Program-made: the position numbers and the translations under genes | Notes under the pieces: generated by a model | What the model was told of the DNA's origin: nothing | The model's input: the letters and a program-made list of their open reading frames with translations, nothing else | The model's database searches: none | In this document: positions 45,480-62,949 of the stretch, one piece after another | Position numbering within the stretch: position 1 is the stretch's first letter | How the letters are laid out: every line of letters starts with the position of its first letter | Sequence record: LR756511.1 | Length of the DNA stretch: 64,000 nt | Reading direction: 5' to 3' (one strand)

Positions 45480-46034
45480 ATGGCTATTCTTGAAAGACTT
45501 AATTTAACAAAAGCAGATGTTGAAAAGATTGAACAGACCATAAGCCAACAAAGACAAGTTGAGCGATACTGTATGCTCCGACAATGGTGCTATGGGAGGG
45601 TGCTTGACTTTGGCTGTGGCTGCGGGTATGGAAGTTGGATAATTTCTAGAAACCCCGATGTTAAGTTTGTAAAAGGATATGATATCGACATCCCGACCCT
45701 GGATTGGGCTAGAAACAATTTCACAAATCCCAATTTAGAGTACAGTAACAAGGCTGAAGAAACGTTTGATGTAGTGTTAGCAATTGAAGTTATTGAACAT
45801 ATTGAAGACAAGCATTTTTTACCCTCATTCATCCTTAAGACTAAAGCTAAGGAAGTAATTATTTCTTATCCATCAAGAAAGACTACTCATTATAACAAAT
45901 TCCACTATTATGATTACACGACCCAAGAAATCCTTGACTTATTTCCAGAATATTTCCTGTTTAAAGAAATGAATTACCGCGAGGAATCTAACATCCTACA
46001 TCTCCAGCGCGAAGGGCATTCTAGTGTTAAGTAA
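45480..46034 (+). CDS. Class I SAM-dependent methyltransferase
   Basis: RVLDFGCGCGYGS, GYDID, FDVVLAIEVIEH. Confidence 0.9.
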   Translation: MAILERLNLTKADVEKIEQTISQQRQVERYCMLRQWCYGRVLDFGCGCGYGSWIISRNPDVKFVKGYDIDIPTLDWARNNFTNPNLEYSNKAEETFDVVLAIEVIEHIEDKHFLPSFILKTKAKEVIISYPSRKTTHYNKFHYYDYTTQEILDLFPEYFLFKEMNYREESNILHLQREGHSSVK

Positions 46035-46854
46035 TTTAGGCATATGTGCCGTAATCAAAGACGAAAGAGAAGATTATCTACGGGAATGGGTTAACTACCA
46101 TTTAGGCATAGGTGTTGAGTTTGTTCATATTTATGATAACAACAGCGCAATACCTATAGGCGAACTACTAGCCGATATTCCCCAAGTTCAAGCCGAACAA
46201 TTTCCTTGTCTAGATGGTCGGAAGCATATGATTGCGTATGATGATTTCATTGAAAAATACAGCAACAAAGTTAAATGGACCGCCTTTATTGATCCAGACG
46301 AGTATATCGTCATTCGAAATCCACCACACCAACTGGACGTATTTCTAAAGGATTATGAGGAATTTGGTGGGGTTGGTCTAAATTGGTTAATTTTTGGTTC
46401 TAATAACCTCATAGACAATCCTTCTGGCTCTCAAATAAAGGCGTTTACACGCCGCTGTCCTGACGGTTCGGTTGTGAACCAACATATTAAAACAATCGTT
46501 CAAATGTGTCATGTGGTGAAAAGTTGCGACGGACATCATTACATTTATAAAGACGGTAAATATTGTGTAAATGAATTAAAAAATAGGGTGAATGGTGCGT
46601 TCTCACCATTGTCATACACTCTAGCTTGCATACATCATTACCAACATCGTAGCTTCAATGATTATTTACAAAAAATCAAACGAGGCGCGTCTAGCGGTTT
46701 AAAACACGTTTACCACGAACACCATTTCCGCAATAACGATCCAACATGCAATATGGTGGAGGACTTAACGCTTTATAAAATAGCCGAGGAGAAAAATCTT
46801 GTATACAACAATAACGTGTCCAATTCGAATATCACTAGTGGGCGGATCGAGTGA
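46024..46854 (+). CDS. GT92/GT2-like glycosyltransferase
   Basis: ICAVIKDE...EWVNYH...IYDNNS, FIDPDEY, NWLIFG, IHHY. Confidence 0.8.
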   Translation: MLSNLGICAVIKDEREDYLREWVNYHLGIGVEFVHIYDNNSAIPIGELLADIPQVQAEQFPCLDGRKHMIAYDDFIEKYSNKVKWTAFIDPDEYIVIRNPPHQLDVFLKDYEEFGGVGLNWLIFGSNNLIDNPSGSQIKAFTRRCPDGSVVNQHIKTIVQMCHVVKSCDGHHYIYKDGKYCVNELKNRVNGAFSPLSYTLACIHHYQHRSFNDYLQKIKRGASSGLKHVYHEHHFRNNDPTCNMVEDLTLYKIAEEKNLVYNNNVSNSNITSGRIE

Positions 46855-48175
46855 TTTAGATGAATATATAGAAAAACATGGCAGAGGCTCAGTTATTTCT
46901 TTTACTCCTCAGCTTAACACGTATCTAACCATATCCAAGTCTATCTTGGGTAAGAACAATTTTGAAAAGAAGTATATCGTAAATTATTCAAAGAGAGAGG
47001 AAGTCTCAAATATCGCTAATATCGAAAACGATCTAGTCCGTGTTTTCTTCGAAGAATTCAAAGTCGCTCCCTGCTCCGTCCATATGACTAGCGATGTTTT
47101 CTCAAGCGGCTCTGGCTTGGCTGTATCGTCCTCTTACGCTTGTTGTTTAGCGAAGGCGTTGGCAGAAATGCAAGACAAAATACTGAGCAACGTTGAATGC
47201 GGCAACATTGCTCATAAAATGGAGAAAAAAGTAAATCCACTACTAGGGATGCAAGATGTATTTGGCTGTTGTGTTGGAGGCTTTAAGAAAATAGAATTCA
47301 GTAAAAATGGCCCTCCAAAATATACATTTTTACCAACGACCATTTTTGATTCATTCAACATTTGTCTTTATTTTACGGGGCTTACCAGAAGTTCCACAGA
47401 GGTCTTAAAAACCGTTTCTGTGCCAAATCAGGATACTTTTAATCCACTTGTTGATGAAGCTGAAAGATGTCTCGTAGTCAATGATTATCGTTCCTTTTTG
47501 AAAATGGTTAGAGAAGGCTGGGAAAAAAAGAAAGCAACATCGAAGAAAATTCTTAATTTCGAGTTGGTTAAAATGGACAATTGGATTAATGGTTTACATG
47601 GACATCTTGCGCATAAATTGTGCGGTGCAGGTAGTGGTGGTTTCTTTCTAGTTTTTTTTGAGAAAGATGCTTATATTCCTCCTGGCTTCTGTCCAATCTC
47701 CCTCTCTCCAACGGGCATTAGAACAATATTACACATTCCTGGCTCCCCCGCCACGAATACTAGTATTCGTGGCATTGTCGCTGGTGCGTTTGATGTTATT
47801 CATCCTGGCTATTGTCGAATGTTTAAAGAATGCAAAAATCATTGCAGCCATCTTACTGTTGCATTACATGATGATCCTTCAATAGAAAGAAATAAAATAA
47901 AACCCATTCATACTTTACAGGAAAGAGAGGAAATCCTATTGTCTCTAAACTACGTAGATGAAGTTATTCCATACCAGTATGAAAGCGACTTAGAAAAATT
48001 ACTACAAAAGGGATTCGATGTAAGATTCCTTGGAGATGATTATAAAAACAAAAATTACACTGGCGAGCAACTAGACATACCAATCGTCTATATTAGTCGT
48101 GACCACGAATATTCTACTACAAATTTGAAAAAACTAATTTGGCAAACATTTGATAATTCTCAGGGACAATCTTAA
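46799..48175 (+). CDS. Fusion of GHMP sugar kinase (HddA-like) and cytidylyltransferase-family domain
   Basis: PIRISLVGGSSD, GSGLAVSS, GMQD, KLCGAGSGG; then GAFDVIHPGY...ERE...VDEV...GDDY...STT. Confidence 0.85.
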   Translation: MYTTITCPIRISLVGGSSDLDEYIEKHGRGSVISFTPQLNTYLTISKSILGKNNFEKKYIVNYSKREEVSNIANIENDLVRVFFEEFKVAPCSVHMTSDVFSSGSGLAVSSSYACCLAKALAEMQDKILSNVECGNIAHKMEKKVNPLLGMQDVFGCCVGGFKKIEFSKNGPPKYTFLPTTIFDSFNICLYFTGLTRSSTEVLKTVSVPNQDTFNPLVDEAERCLVVNDYRSFLKMVREGWEKKKATSKKILNFELVKMDNWINGLHGHLAHKLCGAGSGGFFLVFFEKDAYIPPGFCPISLSPTGIRTILHIPGSPATNTSIRGIVAGAFDVIHPGYCRMFKECKNHCSHLTVALHDDPSIERNKIKPIHTLQEREEILLSLNYVDEVIPYQYESDLEKLLQKGFDVRFLGDDYKNKNYTGEQLDIPIVYISRDHEYSTTNLKKLIWQTFDNSQGQS

Positions 48176-48758
48176 GAGGACAACACACTTCTCTTATCAT
48201 TTCTAATTGCGATTCAGAAATGTCAATTTTTTCATTGGTAACTTCATTCATATAAATTAAATTAGGAATTGGAATATTAATCATTTTATTAAGTTTCCAA
48301 AATAAATTCTCTAGATGGTTGACTTCAATGAGAATTAGTTCTTTACATACTACTTGTTCGCCGTTTCTATTTAGAAGTAAATTTTCTGGAGAATGGTTAA
48401 ACCATTCAAAACCACCTTTCCAATCACTCCAATTTATCCCACAATAATCGCCTCTATAATCTATGCCTTTATTTAACACAAATTTGTCAAACGATATTTT
48501 CCCCGCATGTTCAGGAAAGTCCAGTTTGAATTTAGAGTAACAAGACGTAACCCACTGTTTGAGCGGTCGGTACGGAAGGAATATAGTGTGCGAACTGAAA
48601 TCAAAATCTACTTCTGATACTTTTACATGATGAAAGGAACGAGGTGTAGATATTAATTTACCTTCATTTGAAACTGATTCTACCATTTGTATAATAGAAT
48701 TAGACGCACACCTTGGGGGCAAAAGGATTGTTACATTGTATTTGGTGAAAATTATCAT
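48117..48758 (-). CDS. Sulfotransferase-like protein (divergent)
   Basis: LPPRCASNSI loop, FLPYRP, ISFDKFV. Confidence 0.4.
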   Translation of the reverse strand: MIIFTKYNVTILLPPRCASNSIIQMVESVSNEGKLISTPRSFHHVKVSEVDFDFSSHTIFLPYRPLKQWVTSCYSKFKLDFPEHAGKISFDKFVLNKGIDYRGDYCGINWSDWKGGFEWFNHSPENLLLNRNGEQVVCKELILIEVNHLENLFWKLNKMINIPIPNLIYMNEVTNEKIDISESQLEMIREVCCPLKIVPENYQMFAKLVFSNL

Positions 48759-48790
48759 AAATTATCATAATAATTAACTAATTAAAATTA

Positions 48791-49696
48791 ATGAGAATAT
48801 TAGTAACAGGCGGCAATGGTTTTATTGGTAGTCATGTTGTGGATCAATTGCTAGAACATGGTCACGACGTTGTGGTAGTAGATGATTGTTCTGCAAATAA
48901 TGAGCAATTTTACTTCAATCCTCTCGCTGAAACCTATAAATTCAGTATATGTGACTATACAAACTTACTTGAAGTCAGCAAGGATTGTCAATTTTGCTTC
49001 CACTTGGCAGCTGAATCTCGCTTACAAGCAGCTATTGAAAATCCATATCGTGCCATAACCGTTAACGTGCTTGGAACCCACTCCGTTCTGGAAGTTTGCA
49101 GGAAACATGAAATGGGGCTTGTATTCTCTTCAACTTCCTCCATTTATGGCTTGAACAACAATGTGCCATTAAAAGAAACAGAACCAGAAGATTGTTTAAA
49201 TCCATATGCTTCTACGAAATATGCCGCAGAACTTTTAATTAGAAATTATGTTAAATTACATGGCGTGAAAGCGTCGATCCTACGATATTTCAATGTTTTT
49301 GGCGAGCGATCACCCTCAAAGGGTCAGTACGCTCCTGTTGTGGGTATATTTCTCAATCAAAAAAAACGAAACGAACCATTAACAGTGGTTGGAGAGGGCA
49401 CGCAAAGACGAGACTTCATTTATGTTGGCGATGTTGCAGCGGCAAACATTGCTTGTATAAAACATTGGAAAAAAGTTAATGATGGTTCTGTATTTAACAT
49501 TGGATCAGGAACAAATATTGCTGTCATCACGCTCGCTAAAATAATTTCAAAAGAGATAAAATTCCTCCCGCCACGTTTAGGCGAGGCTAATGATAATCTT
49601 TGTAGTAATTATAAGTTCTGCGAAATAACAAGTTGGCATCCAACAACAACAATAACAGATTGGGTTGGTCAACAAGTTTCCCAATTGCAACAATGA
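48791..49696 (+). CDS. NAD-dependent epimerase/dehydratase
   Basis: VTGGNGFIGS, FSSTSS, YASTK, LRYFNVFG, RDFIYVGD. Confidence 0.9.
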   Translation: MRILVTGGNGFIGSHVVDQLLEHGHDVVVVDDCSANNEQFYFNPLAETYKFSICDYTNLLEVSKDCQFCFHLAAESRLQAAIENPYRAITVNVLGTHSVLEVCRKHEMGLVFSSTSSIYGLNNNVPLKETEPEDCLNPYASTKYAAELLIRNYVKLHGVKASILRYFNVFGERSPSKGQYAPVVGIFLNQKKRNEPLTVVGEGTQRRDFIYVGDVAAANIACIKHWKKVNDGSVFNIGSGTNIAVITLAKIISKEIKFLPPRLGEANDNLCSNYKFCEITSWHPTTTITDWVGQQVSQLQQ

Positions 49697-50520
49697 ACTT
49701 CAAAACGTTCTGTATTGTCGATATGTTTAAACCATTTTAAAGGAGCGATAATCCTTCGGCCTTCATTGGTGCCAAGCCATGCACCCCACCAGCTAAAACT
49801 GCTGCTGCAAACGATTCCATGATCGCATTGACGCATTATTTCTAACTGAGCAGAGATATTAACTACATTCGCAGGCTCTTGATGTATACTCAAGTCAGTA
49901 ATATATGGGCAAAAAGTAACATTTTCCTCAATAAAGTTAGCTTTACACCAATCAATATCATCGGCAACGACCACCAGATGCACTTCTCCCAATTTCTCCC
50001 TGGCTTTTCTATAAAAGGACAAAGGTTGGATATAATGGAAAGGACTTCTTTTATAATCATCCCCAACTCTGAAGCTAGCAAAAGCAATGGGCATTTTAAC
50101 CTTGGCACGCAAATCCGCCAAGAAGTTCCCAGCCATTTCAACGTATTGTGGACGCAGGGAAAACTCTTTGAGTATTTTGTCTCTAGATTTAATGAAATAG
50201 TTCTGACTTTGAAAATAGCCGTAAAAATCCGTGCCATCTTCAACTTCAAACACTTCATGGTCTAGAGATATACCACTACAAATTCGCGGGTCTTCCTTTT
50301 CGTGATAACGTTTAGTAACTGGCATACCCGAACTATCTTTAGCACTTAGACCTGGAAACATCTGTGGCATCATGAACGATACCCATTTATGCCAAAATTG
50401 ATTTGAATAAGGAACGCCAAATTCATAACCCTTACTATCAGCTATAGCCAGCACGGTCGCATATTCAAACAATTGATTCCCTAAACTCCCGATTCTGCCT
50501 ATTTCTTGATACGTTAGCAT
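49669..50520 (-). CDS. GT11 (alpha-1,2-fucosyltransferase-like) glycosyltransferase
   Basis: GSLGNQLFEYA, GYFQS, RVGDDY, SSFSWWGAWL. Confidence 0.85.
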   Translation of the reverse strand: MLTYQEIGRIGSLGNQLFEYATVLAIADSKGYEFGVPYSNQFWHKWVSFMMPQMFPGLSAKDSSGMPVTKRYHEKEDPRICSGISLDHEVFEVEDGTDFYGYFQSQNYFIKSRDKILKEFSLRPQYVEMAGNFLADLRAKVKMPIAFASFRVGDDYKRSPFHYIQPLSFYRKAREKLGEVHLVVVADDIDWCKANFIEENVTFCPYITDLSIHQEPANVVNISAQLEIMRQCDHGIVCSSSFSWWGAWLGTNEGRRIIAPLKWFKHIDNTERFEVHCCNWETC

Positions 50521-51032
50521 TGTCTCAATACTCCTAATATTAAGTTGTTTACATATTTGTCCTTCTTAAAGATTGCATCGCGTTGTTTACCCTCAATGAC
50601 AAAACCAGCTGCTTCGGCACATTTTAAAGAAACCTTGTTAGTTTCAAGTATTTGAGCATCCAAACGGCGTAAATTCATTATTTCAAAACAAAAATCAACA
50701 CCCGCTTTAACAAGCAGTTTCCCTTTTCCTTTACCTCGAAACTCTTTAAAGACATCCCAGCCCACTTCCGCACGACGACTCTGCCAATCTACATTAAATA
50801 ATTTAAAAATTCCAAACTCGCTATCAGTAGCAGCAATCAACACAAGGTTACGAGGACAATGAGTTTCGTAGCTAATAGACTCAAGCCACTTTTCTTGGCT
50901 TGTTAAATTTGCCAGCGTTACAGTGTGAGTGCCAAAATGACTTTCATTTTTTAGAGATAGCAAAACAGTCGCATCTGCTTTATCAGTTTTCCTAAACTTG
51001 ACACCATTGGAATGTTCATAAATATAATCCAT
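50514..51032 (-). CDS. GNAT N-acetyltransferase (PseH/RimJ-like)
   Basis: AEVGW, FRGKGKG, ILETN..SLK...GFVIEG. Confidence 0.85.
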   Translation of the reverse strand: MDYIYEHSNGVKFRKTDKADATVLLSLKNESHFGTHTVTLANLTSQEKWLESISYETHCPRNLVLIAATDSEFGIFKLFNVDWQSRRAEVGWDVFKEFRGKGKGKLLVKAGVDFCFEIMNLRRLDAQILETNKVSLKCAEAAGFVIEGKQRDAIFKKDKYVNNLILGVLRQC

Positions 51033-52154
51033 TTACCAACCTTTCCTAATTACATCCACAACATATTCTCTTTCCTCCTTAGAAACCCACCACCCACAAG
51101 GTATGCAACAATAATGTGGGTCCAACCTGTCCATTCCAGGTAAAAATGATTGGAATTGTCGAACGCAAGTATGAATGTCGCATCGTTTGTGAACTTGGCT
51201 TGCCTCAATTCCATGTGCCTTTAGATGCTTGATAAAATTTGGTCTATTTTCAACTTTTAGAGTATAAAGCCAATAAGAGGACTCAACATTTGATGGTAAT
51301 TCAAGCATCTCTATTCCTTGAACATTTTTCAACGATTCGTTATAAAATGCAGCATTTTCTTTATGAGTCGCAACGTTCTTGTCTATAGAAGGAAGATTCG
51401 ACAAGCCCATTGCCGCCATAATGTCGGTTGGCTGATATTTAAATCCTGATTCTTTAATATCCTGCATACATCGGAACGACGCGCCTGCATCCCTATCAAG
51501 ACCAAACCATCGTAATAATTTCGCTCTGTGGTGAATTTCGCCATTAGGTGATATCAGTATTCCTCCATCTGCGGTCGTTAAGAATTTTATTGCTTGTAAA
51601 CTGAAGCAACAGTAGTTTTTACTATTTCCTATTAACTCACCATTATACTTGCTGTCCCAGCAATGAGCGCAATCTTCAATAATTGGTAAATCCAACCCAT
51701 AAGTGGCTAAGTATTTCTTTTTTATCTCTTTGATATGGTCTAAATCGCAAGGAGTCCCTCCCCAATGCACTAACATGATTCCGCGAGTATTTGGACCAAC
51801 TTTTCGCTCAACATCATAAGTGTCAATATTGCAAGTTTTTGGGTCCACGTCAGCCCACCGTACTTTGAAACCGCTATGAATGATTGAAGAAATCGTAGCA
51901 AAGCAAGTTAGAGGGGTGACGATAATTTCACTATCGGAGTTGTAATTTTCGTCTTTAATCAAATATGCTGCGAGCGTCAAAGCACTCGTACAAGAATTCA
52001 TGACAATGATATAATCATTGTTGAAATGCTTTTTAAGCTCGCCTTCGAATTGTTCAGTTTTTGGGCCTTGTCCTATAAAACCACTGTTTAATACTTTGGT
52101 AACTTCATCAGCAGCATCCGCTGACATGAATGCTTTAAATAGATCAATTTTCAT
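51033..52154 (-). CDS. DegT/DnrJ/EryC1/StrS sugar aminotransferase
   Basis: NSCTSAL, VHWGG, IEDCAH, SLQAIK. Confidence 0.92.
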   Translation of the reverse strand: MKIDLFKAFMSADAADEVTKVLNSGFIGQGPKTEQFEGELKKHFNNDYIIVMNSCTSALTLAAYLIKDENYNSDSEIIVTPLTCFATISSIIHSGFKVRWADVDPKTCNIDTYDVERKVGPNTRGIMLVHWGGTPCDLDHIKEIKKKYLATYGLDLPIIEDCAHCWDSKYNGELIGNSKNYCCFSLQAIKFLTTADGGILISPNGEIHHRAKLLRWFGLDRDAGASFRCMQDIKESGFKYQPTDIMAAMGLSNLPSIDKNVATHKENAAFYNESLKNVQGIEMLELPSNVESSYWLYTLKVENRPNFIKHLKAHGIEASQVHKRCDIHTCVRQFQSFLPGMDRLDPHYCCIPCGWWVSKEEREYVVDVIRKGW

Positions 52155-52177
52155 TTTATTCCAATCGTTGTTTCTCC

Positions 52178-52183
52178 TATCTA
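52178..52183 (-). promoter_or_regulatory. Late-type TANATA box (TAGATA)
   Basis: In the gap between the kinase and DegT genes, 23 nt before ATG. Confidence 0.45.
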
Positions 52184-52212
52184 TAAAAGTATAAATCTGC
52201 TTAATTTTCAGC

Positions 52213-53784
52213 TTATTTGTCTAAAACTAACTCCATCTGAGAAATGGAAAAGCTGCCAGAAAAGGCAATGATAATCATGTCTTTCTTTGCTGCCTTTTCG
52301 CCTTTTCTATTCATGCCATTAAACCATAGATGAGTAACCATCAAATGCTCTGTCGGACCTTCATATCTGTAAAGTTGCTCATTATCAACACTAACTTTAA
52401 CGCTGTTCTTTTTAACAATAAACTCTATTTGACTTTCCTTGTTGATCGCTAAAGTTTGCTTGTTTACAGGAGTGACCGCCGATTTACTCCCGCCAAATGG
52501 AATGCCAACAGAGCTTTCCATGCCATTTAAATCTCCAAAAATGGCACTACACATAGCCTTATCAACAATAAAACCAACAACAAACTCAGAACCGCTTAAT
52601 CGCTTAACCTTCATGCGAAGAGTATAATTACCAGAAACCTTATAAGGAATTTGCAGTCGCGCCGCAAGACCAGCACCAATAAGGTTTCCATCTACTTTGG
52701 TCCAATCGCCCCAAAGCTTATCTTTTTCAGGATCAATTAACTGCAAAAGATTCTTGGTTTCGGTTTTTGCTTCCTCGATCTTTTTAGGCTCAATTTTCGG
52801 CTTTTGTGCCACGCTTTGTTTTGAACCGAAAAGGAAATATCCAGCGATACAAGCCAGAACAATCGCAGAAATTAAAAAACTAGATAAAATAACAAGAAAA
52901 AGCTTCTTGCGATGTGGCTTTTTAACTAACTTCGTCTTTTGCTTTACAAAAGGTTGTAAAGCCATAGCTAGCTCGGCAGGAGTTTGATAACGGTCGGCGG
53001 CATTTTTGGCAAGCATCTTTTTAACCACACCGCCCAAAGCTGGAGCTATGTCCTTGCGAATTTCTGTAATTACTCTCGGCTCCTCAAGAACTCTAGCACT
53101 AAGACGTGCCAACATATCCTTGCCCTCAAAGGGCAGTGAGCCTGTAAGAAGATAAAACAGTGTACAACCCAAACTATAGATATCACCACGAATATCAACC
53201 TTGCGAGAATCGGTAGCTTGTTCGGGCGACATATAATCAACAGTGCCGACGACATTGCCAACTTGAGTTAAACGAGTGTTTCGGTCCTTCTCGTCTTCAA
53301 CAAGCGTCAGACCAAAATCCAGCACTTTAACCATTTCCCCCTTGTCCGTTTTGGCCAAGAAGAGATTGGCTGGCTTGATGTCTCTGTGAATTAAACCCTT
53401 TTCAAAAGCGTGTTGCAATCCAAGAGCGGCTTGGCGGATATATTCGCAGGCTTGTGGAATTGGTAGCGGACCTTTCTTCTTTACCAAATTACCAAGATCA
53501 GTACCTTCCATATATTCCATTGCGATATAATTAATCCCATCTACTTCCTCTGCGTCGTAGATAGCAACGATATGCGGGTCGGAGAGTTTGGCAGCGGATT
53601 TGGCTTCTCTTTGAAATCTAGCTAAAGCTTTCTTATTGGAGATTTTCTCGTTTTTGATTATTTTCAATGCGACGATACGATCCAGCTTGCGATGGCGGGC
53701 TTTGTAAACAGTGCCCATGCCACCTTCACCAAGTTGTTCGATTAGTTCATAGCTGCCAATAGAATTTGAAACTTCACTGGACAT
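52213..53784 (-). CDS. Hanks-type Ser/Thr protein kinase with TM helix and C-terminal domain
   Basis: LGEGGMGTVYKA, VALK, HRDIKPAN, DFGL, GTVDYMSPEQ, DIYSLG; hydrophobic helix near aa 295-320. Confidence 0.95.
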   Translation of the reverse strand: MSSEVSNSIGSYELIEQLGEGGMGTVYKARHRKLDRIVALKIIKNEKISNKKALARFQREAKSAAKLSDPHIVAIYDAEEVDGINYIAMEYMEGTDLGNLVKKKGPLPIPQACEYIRQAALGLQHAFEKGLIHRDIKPANLFLAKTDKGEMVKVLDFGLTLVEDEKDRNTRLTQVGNVVGTVDYMSPEQATDSRKVDIRGDIYSLGCTLFYLLTGSLPFEGKDMLARLSARVLEEPRVITEIRKDIAPALGGVVKKMLAKNAADRYQTPAELAMALQPFVKQKTKLVKKPHRKKLFLVILSSFLISAIVLACIAGYFLFGSKQSVAQKPKIEPKKIEEAKTETKNLLQLIDPEKDKLWGDWTKVDGNLIGAGLAARLQIPYKVSGNYTLRMKVKRLSGSEFVVGFIVDKAMCSAIFGDLNGMESSVGIPFGGSKSAVTPVNKQTLAINKESQIEFIVKKNSVKVSVDNEQLYRYEGPTEHLMVTHLWFNGMNRKGEKAAKKDMIIIAFSGSFSISQMELVLDK

Positions 53785-53837
53785 TAGTTCACCTTATCGT
53801 CAGAGTTGTTGCCTCCAAAAGCATAGCTCACGATTAC

Positions 53838-53865
53838 ACTTTACTGCAAATTTCTTCGTTGGAAA
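53838..53865 (-). promoter_or_regulatory. Sigma70-like early promoter
   Basis: TTTCCA-N16 (ending TGCAG)-TAAAGT. Confidence 0.65.
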
Positions 53866-53897
53866 ATTACTTTATGTTACTGAACAAGCGTTCCCTA

Positions 53898-54881
53898 TTA
53901 CTCACGACTTCCTTTAAAGTGTTTTAGCCAACTGTCTATCATCTCATCTAACATGGCTTCAAAAGTATAAGTTGTCGCCCATCCCAAAACACTCTTGATT
54001 TTACTTGCATCGCCCTTAAGATATTTTAACTCTTCTGGTCTGCAATACTTTGGATTCTCGACAACATGCGACAAATCCAGGTCTAATTTCTTGAAAACAT
54101 AAGCACACAAATCACTTACCGAATGAGTATCTCCTGTTGCTACAACAAAGTCATCAGGAACTTCATGATTTAGTATTAAATGCATTGCTTTTACATAATC
54201 TTTGGAGTGCCCCCAATCACGATAGGAATGCAAATTTCCTAATTCTAGCTTGTCGCACAGCCCCAATTTTATCATAACGGCTGTTTTTATCACTTTAGAC
54301 GTGACAAAATTTGACCCCCTTCTTGGCGATTCATGATTAAACAAAATCCCATTAGACGCAAACATGCCATAAGATTTTCTGTAGTTCCTAATAAGTGAGT
54401 ACCCAAATAATTTAGCACAACCATAAGGACTTACAGGATGCATAGGCGTGGACTCTCTTTGATAGCCGTCAGCATCAACAGAGTTTCCAAACATTTCTGA
54501 TGAGCTTGCTTGATATATTCTTGCAGTTGGATGCGATTGTCTAACCGCTTCCAATACGTTTAAAACGCCTACAGCATTTACTTCGGCAGTATAATTTGGT
54601 ATTTCAAAACTTATTCTGACGTGACTTTGTGCGGCAAGATTGTAGATTTCGTCAGGCTTAATTAGATTTATCAGACTGACCAATCGTGGATAATCTGTAA
54701 CATCTCCATATTCTACATTTATACAACCTTTTACGTTCTCCAACCTTGACTGCTGATGTTCACTAACGGAGTTTCTTCTAATTATACCATATACGCTATA
54801 ATCTTTATCTAATAAATGTTCTACCAAGTAACTGCCGTCTTGACCATTTATTCCAGTTATGAAAGCCTTTTTTTTATTCAT
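53898..54881 (-). CDS. gmd: GDP-mannose 4,6-dehydratase
   Basis: ITGINGQDGSYL, YNLAAQSHV, QASSSEMFG, SPYGCAK, FNHESPRRG, RDWGH. Confidence 0.95.
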   Translation of the reverse strand: MNKKKAFITGINGQDGSYLVEHLLDKDYSVYGIIRRNSVSEHQQSRLENVKGCINVEYGDVTDYPRLVSLINLIKPDEIYNLAAQSHVRISFEIPNYTAEVNAVGVLNVLEAVRQSHPTARIYQASSSEMFGNSVDADGYQRESTPMHPVSPYGCAKLFGYSLIRNYRKSYGMFASNGILFNHESPRRGSNFVTSKVIKTAVMIKLGLCDKLELGNLHSYRDWGHSKDYVKAMHLILNHEVPDDFVVATGDTHSVSDLCAYVFKKLDLDLSHVVENPKYCRPEELKYLKGDASKIKSVLGWATTYTFEAMLDEMIDSWLKHFKGSRE

Positions 54882-55902
54882 TAGTAATTATTATCCTACA
54901 AATATTTTCAATATCATTCTCGGTTAAAGTTAAGGATGAAGGCAAATAAACACAGTTATTAAAAGCTCGTTCAGACTCCTCATACACTAAACCATCCTTG
55001 TACATCTCGTTATGGTTTATTGGTCTGTAATATTTTACAGCTTGGATTTCGTTGTCTTTTAGCTTATCAATGATCTTGTCAGAATTTTTAGTCTCGTAAA
55101 TTACCATCCAGGTAGAATCATACCCAAAATCTTTTATCCTTAAATACTTGCGATAATGATTGAAAATATTCTTCCTTTTTTCCAAAAGCTCTGGCAGCTG
55201 TGTTAGCTGTACCAAGCCAAACGCGGCTAGAATGTCATTAAACTTTAAATTTATCCCTAAATGATCGTGAAGCCTTCTACCTCTCCAATTATCGCCATGA
55301 TCCCTTACTTGCCTGCACCGCTCGTATATTTGTTTGTTATCGGTTATGACAACCCCGCCTTGACCAGTGGTAATGATTTTTGGCACAGAAAAGGAGAAAA
55401 TACCAAAATCTCCAGTCCTGCCTGCTTTATGAATTCCAAGTGCTTGAGCCGAATCCTCAATGAAGGCAATGTTATAACTATCGCAAATAGCTCGTATAGC
55501 TTGTAAATCTTCACCTGCGTAACCATTATGATTTACAAACATTACAGCACTAACATCATCGGATAAAACTATTTTATCGGGATTCATACACATGGTTTCT
55601 GGCTTAATGTCAACTAGTTTTATATTAAATCCCAGAAACCTTGCAGCATTAGCTCCCGCTAAAAAGCTATATGCGGGAAATAGAATTGTTGATCCTGCGG
55701 GTAGGTTTAGACTATAAATACCCATCATAATCGCCACGGTTCCACTTGTTGTGGCGATACAATGACTTGAACCTGTTAGCTTGCAAATTTCTTCTTCAAA
55801 TTCTTCTGTTTTTTTAGATGTGCCAATCCAGCCAGAGCAGATTTGTTGACTAACCGCATCAATGTATTCTTTTTTAATGAGAGGCTCATATTGTGGTATC
55901 AT
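54874..55902 (-). CDS. DegT-family aminotransferase (perosamine synthase-like)
   Basis: TSGTVA, IEDSAQALG, FSFSVPKIITTGQGG. Confidence 0.9.
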   Translation of the reverse strand: MIPQYEPLIKKEYIDAVSQQICSGWIGTSKKTEEFEEEICKLTGSSHCIATTSGTVAIMMGIYSLNLPAGSTILFPAYSFLAGANAARFLGFNIKLVDIKPETMCMNPDKIVLSDDVSAVMFVNHNGYAGEDLQAIRAICDSYNIAFIEDSAQALGIHKAGRTGDFGIFSFSVPKIITTGQGGVVITDNKQIYERCRQVRDHGDNWRGRRLHDHLGINLKFNDILAAFGLVQLTQLPELLEKRKNIFNHYRKYLRIKDFGYDSTWMVIYETKNSDKIIDKLKDNEIQAVKYYRPINHNEMYKDGLVYEESERAFNNCVYLPSSLTLTENDIENICRIIITNE

Positions 55903-56420
55903 TAATATCCCATCTCTCTAGCATATTCAATAGCTTTATCTCTGTTTCTTTTTTTAATTGGCTTTGCTGGACTGCCCACGTAGACTGTCCAGGGTTCCGT
56001 ATTTTTAGTGACAACTGAATTAGCCCCAATGACCGATCCCTCAGCCAGCACTACATTCGGCAATATTGCACAATTTACTCCGCATCCAGAATATCTTTTA
56101 AATATGTTTGTGCCTAATATAAGCGTTCTATACTTTTTGGGGATTACCGCTCCGATTAATCCGCTGTTGATATAGTCCTCGCTTCCGCATACTATTTTGG
56201 TTCCTGCCGCCACGAAAGTAAAGTCTTCCAATATTAGCGAACTGTCCACGCCCCCTATTACCACCACATAAGGAGAAATATGAACATAATCTCCTATTTG
56301 CAGCTTCGTAGAACAAGTAAATCCGTTATCAATGGCCACATGACTACCAATGGTAGTCATGTCTGGATGCTTTATTATCGTGTTGGAATGTATAATAACA
56401 TCCTCACCAATTTTTTTCAT
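55902..56420 (-). CDS. Hexapeptide-repeat (LbH) acyltransferase
   Basis: IGEDVII, IGSHVAI, IGDYVHI, VIGANSVV, YVGSPAK. Confidence 0.9.
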   Translation of the reverse strand: MKKIGEDVIIHSNTIIKHPDMTTIGSHVAIDNGFTCSTKLQIGDYVHISPYVVVIGGVDSSLILEDFTFVAAGTKIVCGSEDYINSGLIGAVIPKKYRTLILGTNIFKRYSGCGVNCAILPNVVLAEGSVIGANSVVTKNTEPWTVYVGSPAKPIKKRNRDKAIEYAREMGY

Positions 56421-56827
56421 ATGAAAACCTTATCCATTTTTTGCCCTAGATATGGGCCAGTTTTATATTCATAGACAACCGTGTTGTCTTGGAGGCACAG
56501 ATAATTATGACCTCCCCTAAAAGTAATAGAACAGTCACCCTCGTCCAGTATGACTTCCTCTAAAATCTTATCATCAATATCGTATAATATAGCTTTGATT
56601 TTTCCCTTGATGACCACCCACGACTCTTGAGTAACGTTTGTGTGCCTGTCCAGGGTTAAATGCTTATGACTTCTAAATGTTTTGTTTTCGTTAAGCTTGA
56701 AACAAGAAACTTGTAAAAATTCATTTTCAGGGGATAAATCAACTCTGTTTTCGCTAATTTCAGCAAAACGGTTTACCACATGAAGCAACGTGCCGTCAAT
56801 TTTAGAATATATTTTATGAAATCCCAT
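56417..56827 (-). CDS. WbuC-like cupin
   Basis: HKH...QESWVVIKG...GGHNY...YEYKTGPY. Confidence 0.75.
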   Translation of the reverse strand: MGFHKIYSKIDGTLLHVVNRFAEISENRVDLSPENEFLQVSCFKLNENKTFRSHKHLTLDRHTNVTQESWVVIKGKIKAILYDIDDKILEEVILDEGDCSITFRGGHNYLCLQDNTVVYEYKTGPYLGQKMDKVFI

Positions 56828-57461
56828 GTATCCTCTTGTTGTGATGCATCATAACTCCGTTTTTTTGTAAAAACTTAACGCCATGAGTTACACAATATAA
56901 ATAGAATATTCTTTCGATGACATGCGAAATGGCTCTACGGTGTTTGTTTTCAATTACAAAATCTTTTATCCAGTGATAAAAAGATTTTATAATCTCCGCT
57001 CTCGTCGTTAAAAATCCAAAGGAAAACCAGACATTAACATTAATGTCTGCAATTCCTTTTTCACGCATGAAATCTTTTAGTACAAAGTTTTCACTAAAAC
57101 AGTCATAAAAACAATTTTGGTGATTCATGTAAGCTAAAACATCATAGCTTTTCAACTCTTCAATCTCTAAATTGGCGTCAAAATTCATGAAATTAAAATC
57201 ATATTCAAGAATTCTGTAAAGTCCGTCGCCTAACAGATTGTTCTCTACCAACGCATAAAATCCAGTAAACGTCAACAAGGACTTATATTCCTCAATGTTG
57301 AGTTTTTGATTTTTACATATCAAACTATTGGGAGAATCCTTAAATGCGTCATCCCCCAAGCATACCCATTGGTAATCCTCTTTTTTCAACACCTCAAGTG
57401 TTGCCGAATCAAACGAGTCAATCAAGTGTTGCCTGGGAACAAATATTAGCGATGAAATCAT
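56814..57461 (-). CDS. Hypothetical glycan-pathway protein
   Basis: First gene of the coupled operon; LEYD and HVIER motifs. Confidence 0.55.
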   Translation of the reverse strand: MISSLIFVPRQHLIDSFDSATLEVLKKEDYQWVCLGDDAFKDSPNSLICKNQKLNIEEYKSLLTFTGFYALVENNLLGDGLYRILEYDFNFMNFDANLEIEELKSYDVLAYMNHQNCFYDCFSENFVLKDFMREKGIADINVNVWFSFGFLTTRAEIIKSFYHWIKDFVIENKHRRAISHVIERIFYLYCVTHGVKFLQKNGVMMHHNKRIHGIS

Positions 57462-57473
57462 CGCTAATATTTA
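57441..57473 (-). promoter_or_regulatory. TAAATA box embedded in a perfect 14-bp inverted repeat spanning the start codon
   Basis: AAATATTAGCGATG-attt-CATCGCTAATATTT; box 57468-57473, ATG 57461. Confidence 0.8.
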
Positions 57474-57501
57474 GAGCATTCAAGAGATTTTTCATACAGC
57501 T

Positions 57502-57738: not shown

Positions 57739-57938
57739 TAATCCTCCAACATAATTCGTAATAACGGCCACGCAAATGAAATCATTACAATACCAAAAAC
57801 AACAGCCAATAGCGTTTGGATAGGATGAAATATACTACCCCTATTAATTACAGCGGGAATGAGGATTAAGGCTTGAATGATCCAAAATCCCCATTCCCGC
57901 CATTGCACAACAAAATAAAAACCATATTTCTTTATCAC
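57738..57938 (-). CDS. Small membrane protein
   Basis: Two hydrophobic helices. Confidence 0.5.
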   Translation of the reverse strand: MIKKYGFYFVVQWREWGFWIIQALILIPAVINRGSIFHPIQTLLAVVFGIVMISFAWPLLRIMLED

Positions 57939-59817: not shown

Positions 59818-59818
59818 T

Positions 59819-62943: not shown

Positions 62944-62949
62944 TATATA
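62944..62949 (+). promoter_or_regulatory. Late-type TANATA box (TATATA)
   Basis: 5 nt before ATG 62955, no SD. Confidence 0.6.

What the first reader, a model, noticed from the sequence alone, without database searches (positions are those of the whole stretch)
45480..57473. Twelve-kb glycan-building cluster, largely behind late-type boxes
Seen: methyltransferase, GT92-like, sugar kinase/nucleotidyltransferase, sulfotransferase-like, epimerase, GT11, GNAT, two DegT, Gmd, LbH acyltransferase, WbuC cupin. The coupled runs 57461-53898 and 52154-49669 start behind TAAATA and TAGATA boxes, as does the GT at 62955. Established: Gmd plus a DegT plus an acyltransferase yields N-acyl GDP-perosamine-type sugars; a second DegT/GNAT pair gives another acetamido sugar. 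No GDP-fucose synthase is visible, so the GT11 donor may not be fucose. Inference: late timing points to glycosylation of the virion (or of the infected cell surface) with a methylated/sulfated amino-deoxy glycan, rather than to replication-coupled DNA modification.
Basis: partly seen in the sequence, partly recalled or inferred. Interest (0 to 1): 0.7.

Follow-up and report, generated by a model that had tools for sequence, protein, structure and literature searches.

The report
Huge-phage sugar-building gene island
A 595-kb uncultured phage carries a low-GC island that makes three unusual activated sugars and the enzymes to link them, probably to coat its own particle or its host's surface; similar islands are known in large marine phages, so this is a rich new example, not a new kind of system.

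Summary
The window is bases 62001-126000 of LR756511.1, a 595-kb uncultured phage with T4-like head genes.

**Gene calls.**
- ORF 48117-48758 ("sulfotransferase-like") is an orphan that could not be tested.
- A 523-aa Ser/Thr protein kinase at 52213-53784 splits the two sugar operons and was not mentioned.
- The first gene of the 57461 operon is a GT-A-fold glycosyltransferase.

**Three sugar modules.**
1. Gmd, DegT, an AntD-like N-acyltransferase, a cupin and a GT make an N-acyl amino-dideoxy GDP-sugar.
2. A CalS13-like DegT, a GNAT and a GT11 form a second module; the DegT-GNAT pair recurs in five other viral contigs.
3. A methyltransferase, GT92, a kinase-nucleotidyltransferase fusion and an SDR form a trimmed NDP-heptose module, known complete in T4-like marine phages.

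**Boxes.** The TA(A/T/G)ATA boxes are real. Genome-wide they are the most enriched upstream hexamers after Shine-Dalgarno. They precede the capsid and terminase genes, and a gp55-like sigma factor exists. "Late" is therefore plausible but unproven.

**Acceptor.** No export machinery, no hydroxymethylase and no mannose-1-phosphate guanylyltransferase (ManC) were found in the genome. An Fcl-like GDP-fucose synthase lies 180 kb away. The acceptor is unresolved: virion protein about 0.45, host envelope about 0.33, DNA about 0.07.

The parts
45480..46034 (+). SAM-dependent methyltransferase (184 aa), first gene of the heptose module
   Evidence: Methyltransf_12/23 hits. 60% identical to a methyltransferase beside GT92 in a 390-kb viral contig, L002. 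A methyltransferase also precedes the kinase in stand-alone phage heptose modules. Overlaps GT92a by 11 nt.
46024..46854 (+). GT92-family glycosyltransferase 'GT92a' (276 aa), soluble
   Evidence: Glyco_transf_92 and GT2_4 hits. 57% identical to the paralogue at 62955-63731. Same GT92-fusion-SDR order in L004. No TM segment.
46799..48175 (+). Fusion of an HddA-like GHMP sugar kinase (about residues 1-315) with a cytidylyltransferase-fold nucleotidyltransferase (about residues 320-458); proposed heptose-phosphate kinase / heptose-1-P nucleotidyltransferase
   Evidence: GHMP_kinases_N + CTP_transf_like; best NCBIfam hits are HddA, TagD and RfaE domain II. The kinase part is about 60% identical to hundreds of 311-aa proteins. 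Only one other fusion was found. In T4-like phages the separate genes sit with a SIS isomerase, a HAD-nucleotidyltransferase and an SDR.
48117..48758 (-). Orphan ORF (213 aa) between the fusion and the SDR; function unknown, may not be a real gene
   Evidence: No family, PDB or homologue hit. AF2 pLDDT 36. Lowest GC (32%) and a weak coding score. In L004 the SDR follows the fusion directly.
48791..49696 (+). Short-chain dehydrogenase/epimerase (301 aa), counterpart of the SDR that ends phage heptose modules (HldD position)
   Evidence: Epimerase E 2e-56. GalE 153 bits; heptose 6-epimerase 121 bits against a cut-off of 274.6. 61-64% identical to the module SDRs of L006 and L004, and 48% to the cyanophage gene annotated as a heptose 6-epimerase. 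Reads STSSIYG where 4,6-dehydratases have Asp-Glu (sequence; own knowledge of the family).
49669..50520 (-). GT11-family glycosyltransferase (283 aa), last gene of operon B
   Evidence: Glyco_transf_11 E 2e-14. phrog_2644 E 4.5e-47. 30% identical to the GT11 coupled to the heptose kinase in L006.
50514..51032 (-). GNAT N-acetyltransferase (172 aa), PseH-like
   Evidence: Acetyltransf_3/4/1 hits; PseH 45 bits. Adjacent to the DegT1 homologue in L009-L013.
51033..52154 (-). DegT-family sugar aminotransferase 'DegT1' (373 aa), first gene of operon B
   Evidence: DegT E 7e-75. AtmS13/CalS13 at E 7e-97 and 7e-85. 40-62% identical homologues in six viral contigs and 45% in Flavobacterium phage immuto.
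52178..52183 (-). TAGATA box, 29 nt before the DegT1 start, followed directly by AGGAGA
   Evidence: Sequence. Member of the distal class of the genome-wide TA-N-ATA signal, as before MCP (-39) and TerL (-30).
52213..53784 (-). PknB-like Ser/Thr protein kinase with one TM helix and an about 200-aa C-terminal outer domain; separate unit between the sugar operons
   Evidence: Pkinase E 6e-52; PknB model 303 bits; phrog_2361. TM at residues 292-322. 113-nt and 58-nt gaps on either side, with its own upstream motif AAATTTGCAGTAAAGT.
53898..54881 (-). GDP-mannose 4,6-dehydratase (327 aa), last gene of operon A
   Evidence: GDP_Man_Dehyd E 1e-111; gmd model 374.9 bits against a cut-off of 415. 42% identical to Caballeronia gmd.
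54874..55902 (-). DegT-family sugar aminotransferase 'DegT2' (342 aa)
   Evidence: DegT E 9e-72. PDB relatives include ArnB, perosamine synthase and 3-aminotransferases with no clear winner. Only 24% identical to DegT1. Closer than DegT1 to the DegTs that follow cupin homologues in bacteria.
55902..56420 (-). Left-handed beta-helix N-acyltransferase (172 aa), AntD-like
   Evidence: Hexapep hit; NeuD/PglB/VioB subfamily. Best solved relative is 3VBK/3VBI at E 3e-27. By own knowledge this is AntD of the anthrose pathway.
56417..56827 (-). WbuC-family metal cupin (136 aa); proposed to act on the 4-keto sugar before transamination
   Evidence: TIGR04366 43.6 bits against a cut-off of 42. H54, H56, E68 and H107 are invariant. 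Homologues lie directly upstream of a DegT in three bacterial polysaccharide loci. No match to FdtA/QdtA.
56814..57461 (-). GT-A-fold glycosyltransferase (215 aa), first gene of operon A
   Evidence: 87 remote homologues. AF2 pLDDT 93. Foldseek matches GT6 blood-group transferases, LgtC and WbbM with probability 1.0 and TM about 0.6. Invariant E57, D88, E183, R184.
57468..57473 (-). TAAATA box, 12 nt before the ATG of operon A; no Shine-Dalgarno between them
   Evidence: Sequence. Member of the start-proximal class: 58 genes, first T at -10 to -13, 91% ATG starts, 9% with SD.
57935..59674 (-). Atypical kinase-fold protein (579 aa); role unknown
   Evidence: Weak Pkinase (E 2e-6) and RIO hits. 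LanKC-type kinase domain at E 1e-6.
59819..60493 (-). Sulfotransfer_2-family sulfotransferase (224 aa)
   Evidence: PF03567 E 2e-10, 41.8 bits against a cut-off of 22. A 47% identical paralogue lies at record 433555-434184.
62092..62925 (-). PP2C-type protein phosphatase (277 aa), divergent from GT92b
   Evidence: PP2C_2 E 1e-13. Shares the palindromic TATATA box with GT92b.
62944..62949 (.). Palindromic TATATA box in the 29-nt gap between PP2C and GT92b (-11 from GT92b, -27 from PP2C)
   Evidence: Sequence. TATATA is 8.7x enriched upstream of genes.
62955..63731 (+). Second GT92-family glycosyltransferase 'GT92b' (258 aa)
   Evidence: Glyco_transf_92 E 5e-16. 57% identical to GT92a.

Best explanation
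**What it is.** Window 45480-63731 is a horizontally acquired, low-GC accessory island of a 595-kb phage whose head genes are T4-like. It is a cytoplasmic glycan workshop with three nucleotide-sugar branches and at least four soluble glycosyltransferases.

**Branch A (57461 to 53898).** Host GDP-mannose is dehydrated by Gmd to GDP-4-keto-6-deoxymannose. The metal cupin may rearrange this intermediate. DegT2 aminates it and the AntD-like beta-helix enzyme N-acylates it. The product is a GDP-N-acyl-amino-dideoxyhexose, either perosamine-type or its 3-amino isomer. The GT-A enzyme encoded first in the operon transfers it.

**Branch B (52154 to 49669).** A CalS13-like aminotransferase and a GNAT convert an NDP-4-keto sugar into an acetamido sugar. 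The keto sugar could come from the host, from Gmd, or from the RmlB-like enzyme encoded elsewhere. The GT11 enzyme adds a GDP-6-deoxyhexose, possibly fucose made with the distant Fcl-like gene.

**Branch C (45480 to 49696).** A kinase-nucleotidyltransferase fusion and an SDR activate and probably epimerise a glycero-manno-heptose. The starting heptose phosphates come from the host, because the isomerase and phosphatase of the complete phage module are missing. GT92 transfers the heptose and the methyltransferase tailors it. A sulfotransferase and a second GT92 lie nearby.

**Shown versus inferred.** Shown: the gene identities, coupling, synteny, the dependence on host precursors, and the lack of any export machinery in the genome. 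Inferred: the exact sugars, and the acceptor.

**Acceptor.** My preferred acceptor is one or more phage structural proteins, glycosylated in the cytoplasm late in infection. Two of the operons start behind the same TA(A/T/G)ATA box that precedes the capsid and terminase genes.
For: **Enzyme identities:**

**Coupled operons:**

**Heptose module**
- The kinase part is about 60% identical to proteins that sit in GT11 - kinase - SIS - (HAD+nucleotidyltransferase) - SDR modules. These occur in T4-like phage contigs and in Synechococcus phage SynMITS9220M01.
- The window SDR is 61-64% identical to the module SDRs.
- The GT92 - fusion - SDR order recurs in L004.

**Other modules**
- The DegT1-GNAT pair is conserved in L009-L013.
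- The cupin-DegT pair is conserved in Gmd-type bacterial loci.

**Host dependence:** no SIS, HAD-type GmhB or ManC homologue is found in the genome.

**No phage-encoded lipid-linked route**
- No TM segment in any sugar enzyme.
- No ORF with 8 or more TM helices in the genome, and no Wzm or priming-transferase homologue.

**Late-type signal**
- Boxes enriched 5-9x upstream of genes with sharp positions.
- Boxes present before MCP, TerL, gp13-like and gp15-like genes.
- T4-like MCP, portal, protease and TerL.
- gp55-like ORF at record 464260-464820, profile E 1.4e-8.

**Foreign origin:** the island has the lowest GC in the genome.

**Precedent**
- Mycobacteriophage capsid and tail-tube glycosylation, as cited.
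- Giant-virus self-made capsid and fibril glycans (own knowledge).
Against: - No expression data exist. The box could instead be a non-SD translation signal, because its main peak is only 10-13 nt from the start codon and it also occurs in tightly packed genes.
- The gp55-like hit is weak, and no gp45 homologue was found with the T4 query.
- Only 4 of 8 recognisable structural genes carry a box, against a 21% baseline. The sample is small.
- The island lies about 400 kb from the head module.
- Branch C, the SDR and the sulfotransferase have no box.
- The closest bacterial relatives of the cupin-DegT pair are in exported polysaccharide loci.
- The literature on similar phage islands favours host-surface change.
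- C3 versus C4 amination, the acyl group and the nucleotide used by the fusion are all undetermined.
Confidence: 0.45

Rival explanations
1. Host-envelope remodelling. The same nucleotide sugars and soluble transferases act at the inner face of the host membrane on the host's own lipid-linked LPS, O-antigen or capsule intermediates. The host's flippase or ABC exporter and ligase then carry them out. The cell surface changes during the long infection cycle of a huge phage. This could block superinfection or keep released progeny from sticking to the cell.
For: - Heptose, perosamine-type amino sugars, methylation and sulfation are typical O-antigen and core features.
- Cupin-DegT homologues sit in bacterial loci with a priming transferase, an ABC transporter, sulfotransferases and methyltransferases.
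- Peripheral transferases of ABC-dependent pathways also lack TM helices (own knowledge).
- This is the published reading for similar islands in P-SSM2 and in pelagimyophages.
- The trimmed heptose branch needs a host that already makes heptose phosphates.
Against: - The phage encodes no initiating, flipping, polymerising, exporting or ligating protein.
- Two operons carry the box class shared with capsid and terminase genes. Surface exclusion functions are usually made early (own knowledge).
- No experiment supports this reading for any of the marine phage islands.
Confidence: 0.33
2. DNA hypermodification. One or more of the sugars, especially heptose from the kinase-nucleotidyltransferase branch, are attached to hydroxymethylated pyrimidines in phage DNA to evade restriction.
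For: - A phage gene cluster with a kinase-like enzyme, a cytidylyltransferase and a glycosyltransferase was shown to put mono- and di-heptose on 5hmC.
- GT-A enzymes also act on DNA in that study.
- In L009-L013 the DegT1-GNAT pair lies among DNA polymerase, helicase, PNK/HAD and SLOG genes.
Against: - No ThyA-family hydroxymethylase, dCTPase-type partner or T4 alpha/beta-glucosyltransferase homologue in the genome, by tblastn or phmmer at E<=1.
- No replication or base-modification genes were seen in the island.
- The heptose module also occurs in cyanomyoviruses, which by own knowledge lack hmC.
- N-acyl amino sugars, methyl and sulfate tailoring are not known on DNA.
- TET/JBP dioxygenases and C5-methyltransferases were not searched.
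Confidence: 0.07
3. Partly decayed cargo. The island is a recently captured set of bacterial or phage sugar genes with incomplete pathways. The heptose branch lacks its isomerase and phosphatase, an orphan ORF is inserted, and a kinase interrupts the operons. On this reading it makes no defined glycan.
For: - Lowest GC in the genome.
- Missing SIS and HAD steps compared with the complete module.
- The orphan ORF breaks the fusion-SDR junction that is intact in L004.
Against: - All 13 family-assigned genes are full length, with the family's catalytic sequence motifs intact in those read by eye (both DegTs, Gmd, the SDR).
- Tight translational coupling is preserved.
- Paralogues (GT92 x3, GT11 x2, sulfotransferase x2) and complementary genes (Fcl-like, RmlB-like, HldE-like) are kept elsewhere in the genome.
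- The missing steps are ones a heptose-making host supplies.
Confidence: 0.05

Closest known systems
'LPS' / cell-wall synthesis gene clusters of large T4-like marine phages (Prochlorococcus phage P-SSM2, Synechococcus phages SynMITS9220M01 and S-SCSM2R, pelagimyophages)
   Same: - Multi-gene islands of nucleotide-sugar enzymes and glycosyltransferases in lytic myoviruses with T4-type head genes.
- The heptose kinase, nucleotidyltransferase and SDR are direct homologues at 46-61% identity.
- A GT11 of the same PHROG is present.
- Function is untested in every case.
   Different: - Here the kinase and nucleotidyltransferase are fused, and the isomerase and phosphatase are absent.
- The island adds a Gmd/cupin/DegT/AntD-like branch, sulfotransferases and protein kinases.
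- The genome is three times larger.
Bacterial GDP-perosamine / N-acyl-perosamine pathway and the Bacillus anthrose pathway (AntC aminotransferase, AntD N-acyltransferase)
   Same: The reaction logic is 4,6-dehydratase, then PLP aminotransferase, then beta-helix N-acyltransferase. The LbH's best solved relative is AntD. Perosamine synthase is among the DegT2 relatives.
   Different: - The nucleotide is GDP (via Gmd), not dTDP as in anthrose.
- A metal cupin sits in the operon.
- The C3/C4 position and the acyl donor are unknown.
- No ManC is encoded.
Cupin-DegT gene pairs in Gmd-type polysaccharide loci of Caballeronia pNK83, Bradyrhizobium and Neorhizobium plasmids
   Same: A homologous cupin (27-29% identity, same His-His-Glu-His set) lies immediately before a DegT. 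Gmd, Fcl, methyltransferases and sulfotransferases are nearby.
   Different: The bacterial loci carry a priming transferase or an ABC exporter, and the phage has none. The cupin's reaction is uncharacterised in both.
Virus-encoded particle glycosylation (mycobacteriophage capsid/tail-tube glycans; chlorovirus capsid and mimivirus fibril glycans)
   Same: Virus-encoded soluble glycosyltransferases work in the cytoplasm without a lipid carrier. Giant viruses also make their own amino-dideoxy and methylated sugars (for mycobacteriophages; own knowledge for giant viruses).
   Different: No acceptor is identified here. The island is not beside the structural genes. No direct sequence relationship to those systems was tested.
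Phage DNA sugar hypermodification clusters (Pyle et al.)
   Same: A kinase-like enzyme, a cytidylyltransferase-fold enzyme and a glycosyltransferase deliver heptose.
   Different: Those clusters sit beside a C5-methyltransferase/dioxygenase or a ThyA-like enzyme, and the heptose-installing cluster there uses a GT-B transferase like T4 beta-GT. None of these partners was found here.
T4-type late promoters (TATAAATA read by gp55)
   Same: An AT-rich -10-only box is enriched before genes, including those for the capsid and terminase. A gp55-like ORF and T4-like head genes are present.
   Different: - The consensus is the shorter TA(A/T/G/C)ATA. Only 5 full TATAAATA copies lie upstream of genes.
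- Most copies sit 10-13 nt from the ATG with no Shine-Dalgarno, which implies leaderless or near-leaderless mRNAs.
- No gp45 homologue was found with the T4 query.

Membership tests
GDP-perosamine / N-acyl-perosamine type pathway | GDP-mannose 4,6-dehydratase | tested here: met
   Pfam E 1e-111. gmd model 374.9 bits, just under the 415 cut-off. 42% identical to an annotated bacterial gmd.
GDP-perosamine / N-acyl-perosamine type pathway | PLP sugar aminotransferase coupled to the dehydratase | tested here: met
   DegT2 at E 9e-72, with an 8-nt overlap with Gmd.
GDP-perosamine / N-acyl-perosamine type pathway | Amination at C-4 (as opposed to C-3) | not testable with these tools
   PDB relatives include both 4- and 3-aminotransferases at similar scores.
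GDP-perosamine / N-acyl-perosamine type pathway | Beta-helix N-acyltransferase | tested here: met
   Hexapep hit and NeuD/PglB/VioB subfamily. AntD structures at E 3e-27.
GDP-perosamine / N-acyl-perosamine type pathway | Own GDP-mannose supply (ManC) | tested here: not met
   No hit to a bacterial ManC in any ORF of the genome at E<=0.01. GDP-mannose must come from the host.
FdtA/QdtA 3,4-ketoisomerase route to 3-acetamido-3,6-dideoxy sugars | Small cupin next to the aminotransferase and beta-helix acetyltransferase | tested here: met
   Gene order is cupin - LbH - DegT2 - Gmd. The cupin-DegT pair is conserved in bacteria.
FdtA/QdtA 3,4-ketoisomerase route to 3-acetamido-3,6-dideoxy sugars | Sequence membership of the cupin in the FdtA/QdtA family | tested here: not met
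   No Pfam FdtA hit. Neither the single sequence nor the 5-sequence profile finds these structures in the PDB; only generic metal cupins appear at E about 0.05.
WbuC-family cupin | Score above the curated model cut-off, with metal ligands present | tested here: met
   43.6 bits against 42. H54, H56, E68 and H107 are invariant. The family has no established reaction (one search shows only annotation use).
NDP-glycero-manno-heptose pathway | Sedoheptulose-7-P isomerase (GmhA, SIS) | tested here: not met
   Three phage SIS queries give no hit in the window or the genome.
NDP-glycero-manno-heptose pathway | Anomeric heptose-phosphate kinase | tested here: met
   Best NCBIfam hit is HddA, though at 72 bits it is far below the cut-off. 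46-60% identical to kinases that sit beside SIS genes in phage modules.
NDP-glycero-manno-heptose pathway | Heptose bisphosphate phosphatase (GmhB/HAD) | tested here: not met
   Stand-alone phage nucleotidyltransferases carry an N-terminal HAD part. Only their C-terminal part aligns to the fusion, and no other hit exists in the genome.
NDP-glycero-manno-heptose pathway | Heptose-1-P nucleotidyltransferase | tested here: met
   CTP_transf_like domain. RfaE domain II 55 bits. 52-60% identical to the module enzymes. The nucleotide used is unknown.
NDP-glycero-manno-heptose pathway | 6-epimerase-type SDR | tested here: inconclusive
   Same position and 61-64% identity to the module SDRs. However, the heptose-epimerase model gives 121 bits against a cut-off of 274.6, and GalE scores higher.
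T4-type late transcription | AT-rich -10-only box enriched before genes, including virion genes | tested here: met
   Enrichment of 4.8-8.7x; ranks 4, 6 and 13 of 3971 hexamers. Present before MCP, TerL, gp13-like and gp15-like genes.
T4-type late transcription | gp55-type sigma factor | tested here: inconclusive
   The T4 protein alone finds nothing. A six-sequence profile hits the ORF at record 464260-464820 at E 1.4e-8, 31.8 bits.
T4-type late transcription | Sliding-clamp co-activator gp45 (and gp33) | tested here: not met
   T4 gp45 finds no ORF. gp33 was not searched.
T4-type late transcription | Expression late in infection | not testable with these tools
   The phage is uncultured and no transcript data were available.
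Wzx/Wzy- or ABC-dependent surface polysaccharide locus | Priming polyprenyl-phosphate transferase, flippase/polymerase or ABC exporter, ligase | tested here: not met
   No TM helix in any island enzyme. No ORF with 8 or more TM helices in 595 kb. No Wzm or priming-transferase homologue. The only ABC pair looks like an importer.
Phage DNA sugar hypermodification cluster | Enzyme making 5-hydroxymethyl pyrimidines (ThyA-like) | tested here: not met
   T4 gp42 gives no hit by tblastn at E<=0.01 or phmmer at E<=1.
Phage DNA sugar hypermodification cluster | C5-methyltransferase plus TET/JBP dioxygenase | not tested
Phage DNA sugar hypermodification cluster | T4-type DNA glucosyltransferase fold | tested here: not met
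   No homologue of T4 alpha-gt or beta-gt. The island's transferases are GT92, GT11 and a GT6/GT8-like GT-A.
Sulfotransferase (claim for 48117-48758) | Detectable sulfotransferase domain or fold | tested here: inconclusive
   No hit in Pfam, NCBIfam, PHROGs or PDB. No BLAST similarity to the real sulfotransferase at 59819-60493. The structure model is unusable.

The most novel reading that the evidence does not exclude
A huge phage builds its own complex, bacterial-O-antigen-like heteroglycan and attaches it directly to virion proteins in the cytoplasm, as giant eukaryotic viruses do. The glycan would contain an N-acyl amino-dideoxyhexose made with a new cupin step, an acetamido sugar, and a methylated and/or sulfated heptose. 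The operons would be transcribed as leaderless late mRNAs from a TA-N-ATA box read by a gp55-like sigma factor.
Probability: 0.3. Interest if true: 0.75.

Novelty: new variant of a known kind. Interest (0 to 1): 0.45.

Why it matters
Sugar-gene islands have been seen in large marine phages for twenty years, yet none has an experimentally known product or target.

This island is unusually complete and easy to dissect:
- It has three separable branches.
- Its needs from the host are clear: GDP-mannose and heptose phosphates.
- It has no export machinery.
- It carries a promoter-like box shared with the capsid genes.

That combination turns 'virion coat or host-surface disguise?' into a set of cloning and mass-spectrometry experiments that need no cultured host.

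It also offers three specific enzymology leads:
- a metal cupin that travels with a DegT aminotransferase in Gmd pathways;
- a kinase-nucleotidyltransferase fusion seen only twice among the scored hits of a 5.8-billion-protein search;
- a GT-A family with no Pfam model.

Tried and rejected
1. **Box test in the window only.** It gave 5 hits against 3.1 expected, and I first judged the boxes to be chance. The genome-wide test reversed this. The window test was underpowered.
2. **gp55 with T4 alone.** T4 gp55 as a single query found nothing. A six-sequence profile then found a candidate, so the early negative was a sensitivity problem.
3. **Sigma-70 promoter and terminator scan.** Counts were no better than in shuffled sequence.
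4. **ORF 48117-48758.** Family, PDB and homologue searches and a single-sequence AF2 model all failed.
5. **Cupin as an FdtA/QdtA ketoisomerase.** Not supported by sequence or by a profile search.
6. **SDR 48791-49696 as a 4,6-dehydratase feeding DegT1.** Rejected, because it lacks the Asp-Glu pair and is the counterpart of the heptose-module SDR.
7. **Viral-contig scans.** Scans with the GT-A protein and with DegT2 found no relatives.
8. **Genome-collection scan with the fusion.** It returned one irrelevant hit.
9. **Looking for the island's continuation.** The next 30 kb after the window holds AAA ATPases, ArdC-like and VWA-like genes. The only sugar genes there are a third GT92 and a split DegT-like ORF at record 154-156 kb.
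10. **PDB entry codes.** Codes 7B0M, 8VR3 and 9BGP could not be traced in the paper library.

Full report
**Source and setting.** The stated region is 100% identical to LR756511.1, an unannotated 595,163-bp 'uncultured phage' record. Window position x is record position x+62000. I fetched the rest of the record in pieces to put the island in context. With T4 proteins as queries, the genome has clear homologues of:
- the major capsid protein (record 523506-524981);
- the portal, the prohead protease and the large terminase (535401-537242);
- gp25-, gp13- and gp4-like proteins.

The phage therefore has T4-type morphogenesis genes. They lie about 400 kb from the island. The window has no tRNA genes and no N.

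**Checking the gene list.** Pfam and NCBIfam confirm nearly every call (coordinates in the parts list). There are three corrections.
- ORF 48117-48758 ('sulfotransferase-like') matches nothing in four libraries even at E<=10. It has no homologue in the 5.8-billion-protein search, does not resemble the true sulfotransferase nearby, and gives an unusable structure model. It also interrupts a junction that is intact in a related contig.
It has one membrane helix and separates the two minus-strand sugar operons.
- The first gene of the upper operon (56814-57461) has no family hit, but an exhaustive HMMER search found 87 remote relatives. Their alignment gave a confident model (pLDDT 93). That model matches GT-A glycosyltransferases of the GT6, GT8 and WbbM types.

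The cluster also extends past the stated end. It includes an atypical kinase-fold protein, a Sulfotransfer_2 enzyme (59819-60493), a PP2C phosphatase and a second GT92 that is 57% identical to the first.

**Branch A: Gmd operon (57461 to 53898).** The order is GT-A, cupin, LbH, DegT2, Gmd.
- The LbH's best solved relative by a wide margin is entry 3VBK/3VBI (E 3e-27). By my own knowledge this is AntD, which N-acylates dTDP-4-amino-4,6-dideoxyglucose in anthrose synthesis.
- DegT2 keeps the Schiff-base lysine (sequence). It is roughly equidistant from 4-aminotransferases (ArnB, perosamine synthase) and 3-aminotransferases, so the position of amination is open.
- The cupin just passes the WbuC model. 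In the literature that name is only an annotation label.
- tblastn found cupin homologues on Caballeronia, Bradyrhizobium and Neorhizobium plasmids. In all three it lies immediately upstream of a DegT. Neighbours there include gmd, fcl and manC, or sulfotransferases, methyltransferases and an ABC transporter.
- A His-His-Glu-His set is invariant in the cupin alignment.
- Neither the cupin alone nor a profile of it finds FdtA/QdtA ketoisomerases in the PDB.

I therefore treat the cupin as an uncharacterised enzyme acting on the 4-keto intermediate, not as a member of that family. The genome has no ManC, so GDP-mannose is taken from the host.

**Branch B: second amino sugar (52154 to 49669).**
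- DegT1 is strongly related to AtmS13 and CalS13 (E 7e-97 and 7e-85).
- DegT1 and the GNAT recur as an adjacent pair in five IMG/VR contigs.
- A 45% identical homologue sits in a 10-kb transferase/methyltransferase/epimerase cluster of Flavobacterium phage immuto.
- No dehydratase accompanies the pair here. The keto substrate could be the Gmd product, a host intermediate, or the product of an RmlB-like gene at record 296072-297115.
- Next to that gene is an Fcl-like GDP-fucose synthase (253 bits; E 1e-51 to a bacterial Fcl).

Fucose remains a candidate donor for GT11.

**Branch C: a trimmed heptose module (45480 to 49696).**
- The kinase half of the fusion is about 60% identical to hundreds of 311-aa proteins.
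- On T4-like phage contigs these sit in the order GT11, kinase, SIS isomerase, HAD+nucleotidyltransferase, SDR.
- In the cultured Synechococcus phage SynMITS9220M01 the same genes are annotated as heptose 7-phosphate kinase, phosphoheptose isomerase and heptose 6-epimerase.
- The window SDR is 61-64% identical to the module SDRs. It lacks the dehydratase Asp-Glu pair.
- A related contig (L004) has GT92, fusion and SDR in the same order.
- The fusion lacks the HAD part, and no SIS or HAD homologue exists anywhere in the genome.

The branch therefore depends on host heptose phosphates, which suggests a host that makes heptose itself. A separate HldE-like bifunctional enzyme is encoded at record 358053-359471.

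**The boxes.** My first test, limited to the window, found no enrichment, and a sigma-70 scan was uninformative. With all 681 ORFs of at least 100 aa in the genome the picture changed.
- TATATA, TAAATA and TAGATA are 8.7x, 6.2x and 4.8x over-represented in the 40 nt before starts. Only Shine-Dalgarno hexamers rank higher.
- Positions are sharp. There is a main peak with the first T at -10 to -13 (58 genes). Of these, 91% start with ATG and only 9% have a Shine-Dalgarno, against 37% overall.
- A second hump lies at -21 to -35, and those genes do have a Shine-Dalgarno.
- The operon A box belongs to the first class. The DegT1 box belongs to the second, as do those before the capsid (-39) and terminase (-30) genes.
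- A profile of six gp55 proteins finds a candidate late sigma factor at record 464260-464820 (E 1.4e-8).

It is still untested for these reasons:
- The start-proximal class could equally be a translation signal.
- gp45 was not found.
- Only half of the eight recognisable structural genes carry a box.
- Branch C, the SDR, the kinases and the sulfotransferase do not carry one.

**Where does the glycan go?** None of the sugar enzymes has a membrane helix. The whole genome has no ORF with eight or more helices, and no homologue of a Wzm permease or a priming transferase. The phage therefore cannot export a polymer by itself. That fits direct cytoplasmic glycosylation of phage proteins. It also fits soluble transferases working on host lipid-linked intermediates, which is the usual published guess for such islands.

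DNA as a target became more credible with the demonstration of heptosylated 5hmC made by a kinase/cytidylyltransferase/GT cluster. However, I found no ThyA-type hydroxymethylase and no T4-type DNA glucosyltransferase. TET/JBP enzymes remain unchecked.

I rank the options as virion protein about 0.45, host envelope about 0.33, DNA about 0.07 and decayed cargo about 0.05.

**Novelty and limits.** The kind of system is known, and its function is unknown everywhere. The new elements are:
- the combination of three branches in a huge phage;
- the fused and trimmed heptose branch;
- the cupin-DegT unit in a Gmd pathway;
- the link to a genome-wide box.

There are also limits to this analysis:
- Gene sets for the genome-wide statistics come from a greedy longest-ORF call, not a trained gene finder.
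- Hexamer enrichment partly reflects AT-rich spacers, though the rank and the positional peaks argue for a real signal.
- Sugar identities are inferences from homology.

Noticed in passing
whole LR756511.1 genome; in the window e.g. 57468-57473, 62944-62949, and upstream of 11418-11726 and 12216-12830: A class of 58 genes has a TA(A/T/G/C)ATA box whose first T lies 10-13 nt before the start codon. 91% start with ATG and only 9% have a Shine-Dalgarno. The box is often followed by RGGY and then the ATG. This looks like leaderless or near-leaderless mRNAs from a -10-only promoter, or else an unusual translation signal.
   Followed up: partly
record 464260-464820 (+), outside the window: A 186-aa ORF matches a profile of six gp55 late sigma factors (E 1.4e-8) and three of them singly. 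T4 gp55 alone missed it.
   Followed up: partly
window 52213-53784 (-), with upstream motif at 53838-53852: A PknB-like Ser/Thr kinase with one TM helix and an outer C-terminal domain sits between the sugar operons. Its upstream region carries AAATTTGCAGTAAAGT. The same motif precedes window ORF 32417-33040, and a close variant lies just upstream of 36713-37213, so it may be a second promoter class. Only a handful of copies exist genome-wide.
   Followed up: partly
window 57935-59674 (-) and 62092-62925 (-): An atypical 579-aa kinase-fold protein and a PP2C phosphatase are interleaved with the sugar genes. Whether they act on proteins or on sugars is unknown.
   Followed up: no
window 57502-57771 (-): A small ORF whose internal start reads MKKLFLVIVFLVGC. 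This is a lipoprotein-type signal with a lipobox cysteine, plus a weak DUF2158 hit. It is a possible envelope-targeted protein just upstream of operon A.
   Followed up: no
record 294191-297115, 358053-359471, 246658-247449, 433555-434184 and 154653-157879 (all outside the window): Further sugar genes are scattered through the genome: an Fcl-like and an RmlB-like SDR side by side; an HldE-like bifunctional heptose enzyme; a second GT11; a second sulfotransferase (47% identity); and a small group with a split DegT-like ORF, a third GT92 and an MBOAT-like membrane acyltransferase.
   Followed up: partly
loci L009-L013 (IMG/VR contigs of 35-94 kb): The DegT1-GNAT pair sits there among DNA polymerase A, a helicase, PNK/HAD, a cpYpsA SLOG protein and UvdE, with no other sugar gene nearby. 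That is an odd neighbourhood for a sugar aminotransferase.
   Followed up: partly
window 57028-57049: A perfect 9-bp-stem palindrome (CAGACATTAACATTAATGTCTG) lies inside the GT-A gene and was picked up on both strands by the terminator scan.
   Followed up: no
window 48759-48790: Only 32 nt, almost pure A/T, separate the divergent starts of the orphan ORF and the SDR. There is no recognisable box of either class.
   Followed up: no
window 24750-26408 (-): A 552-aa protein without family hits shares 25% identity with a 324-aa protein conserved between the related contigs L004 and L002, next to their sugar genes.
   Followed up: no
window 2625-3878 (-) and 37246-38925 (-): An RNA ligase and a NAD synthetase are encoded upstream of the island. 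Related contigs L002 and L004 carry an RlaP-type RNA-repair nucleotidyltransferase beside their sugar genes.
   Followed up: no
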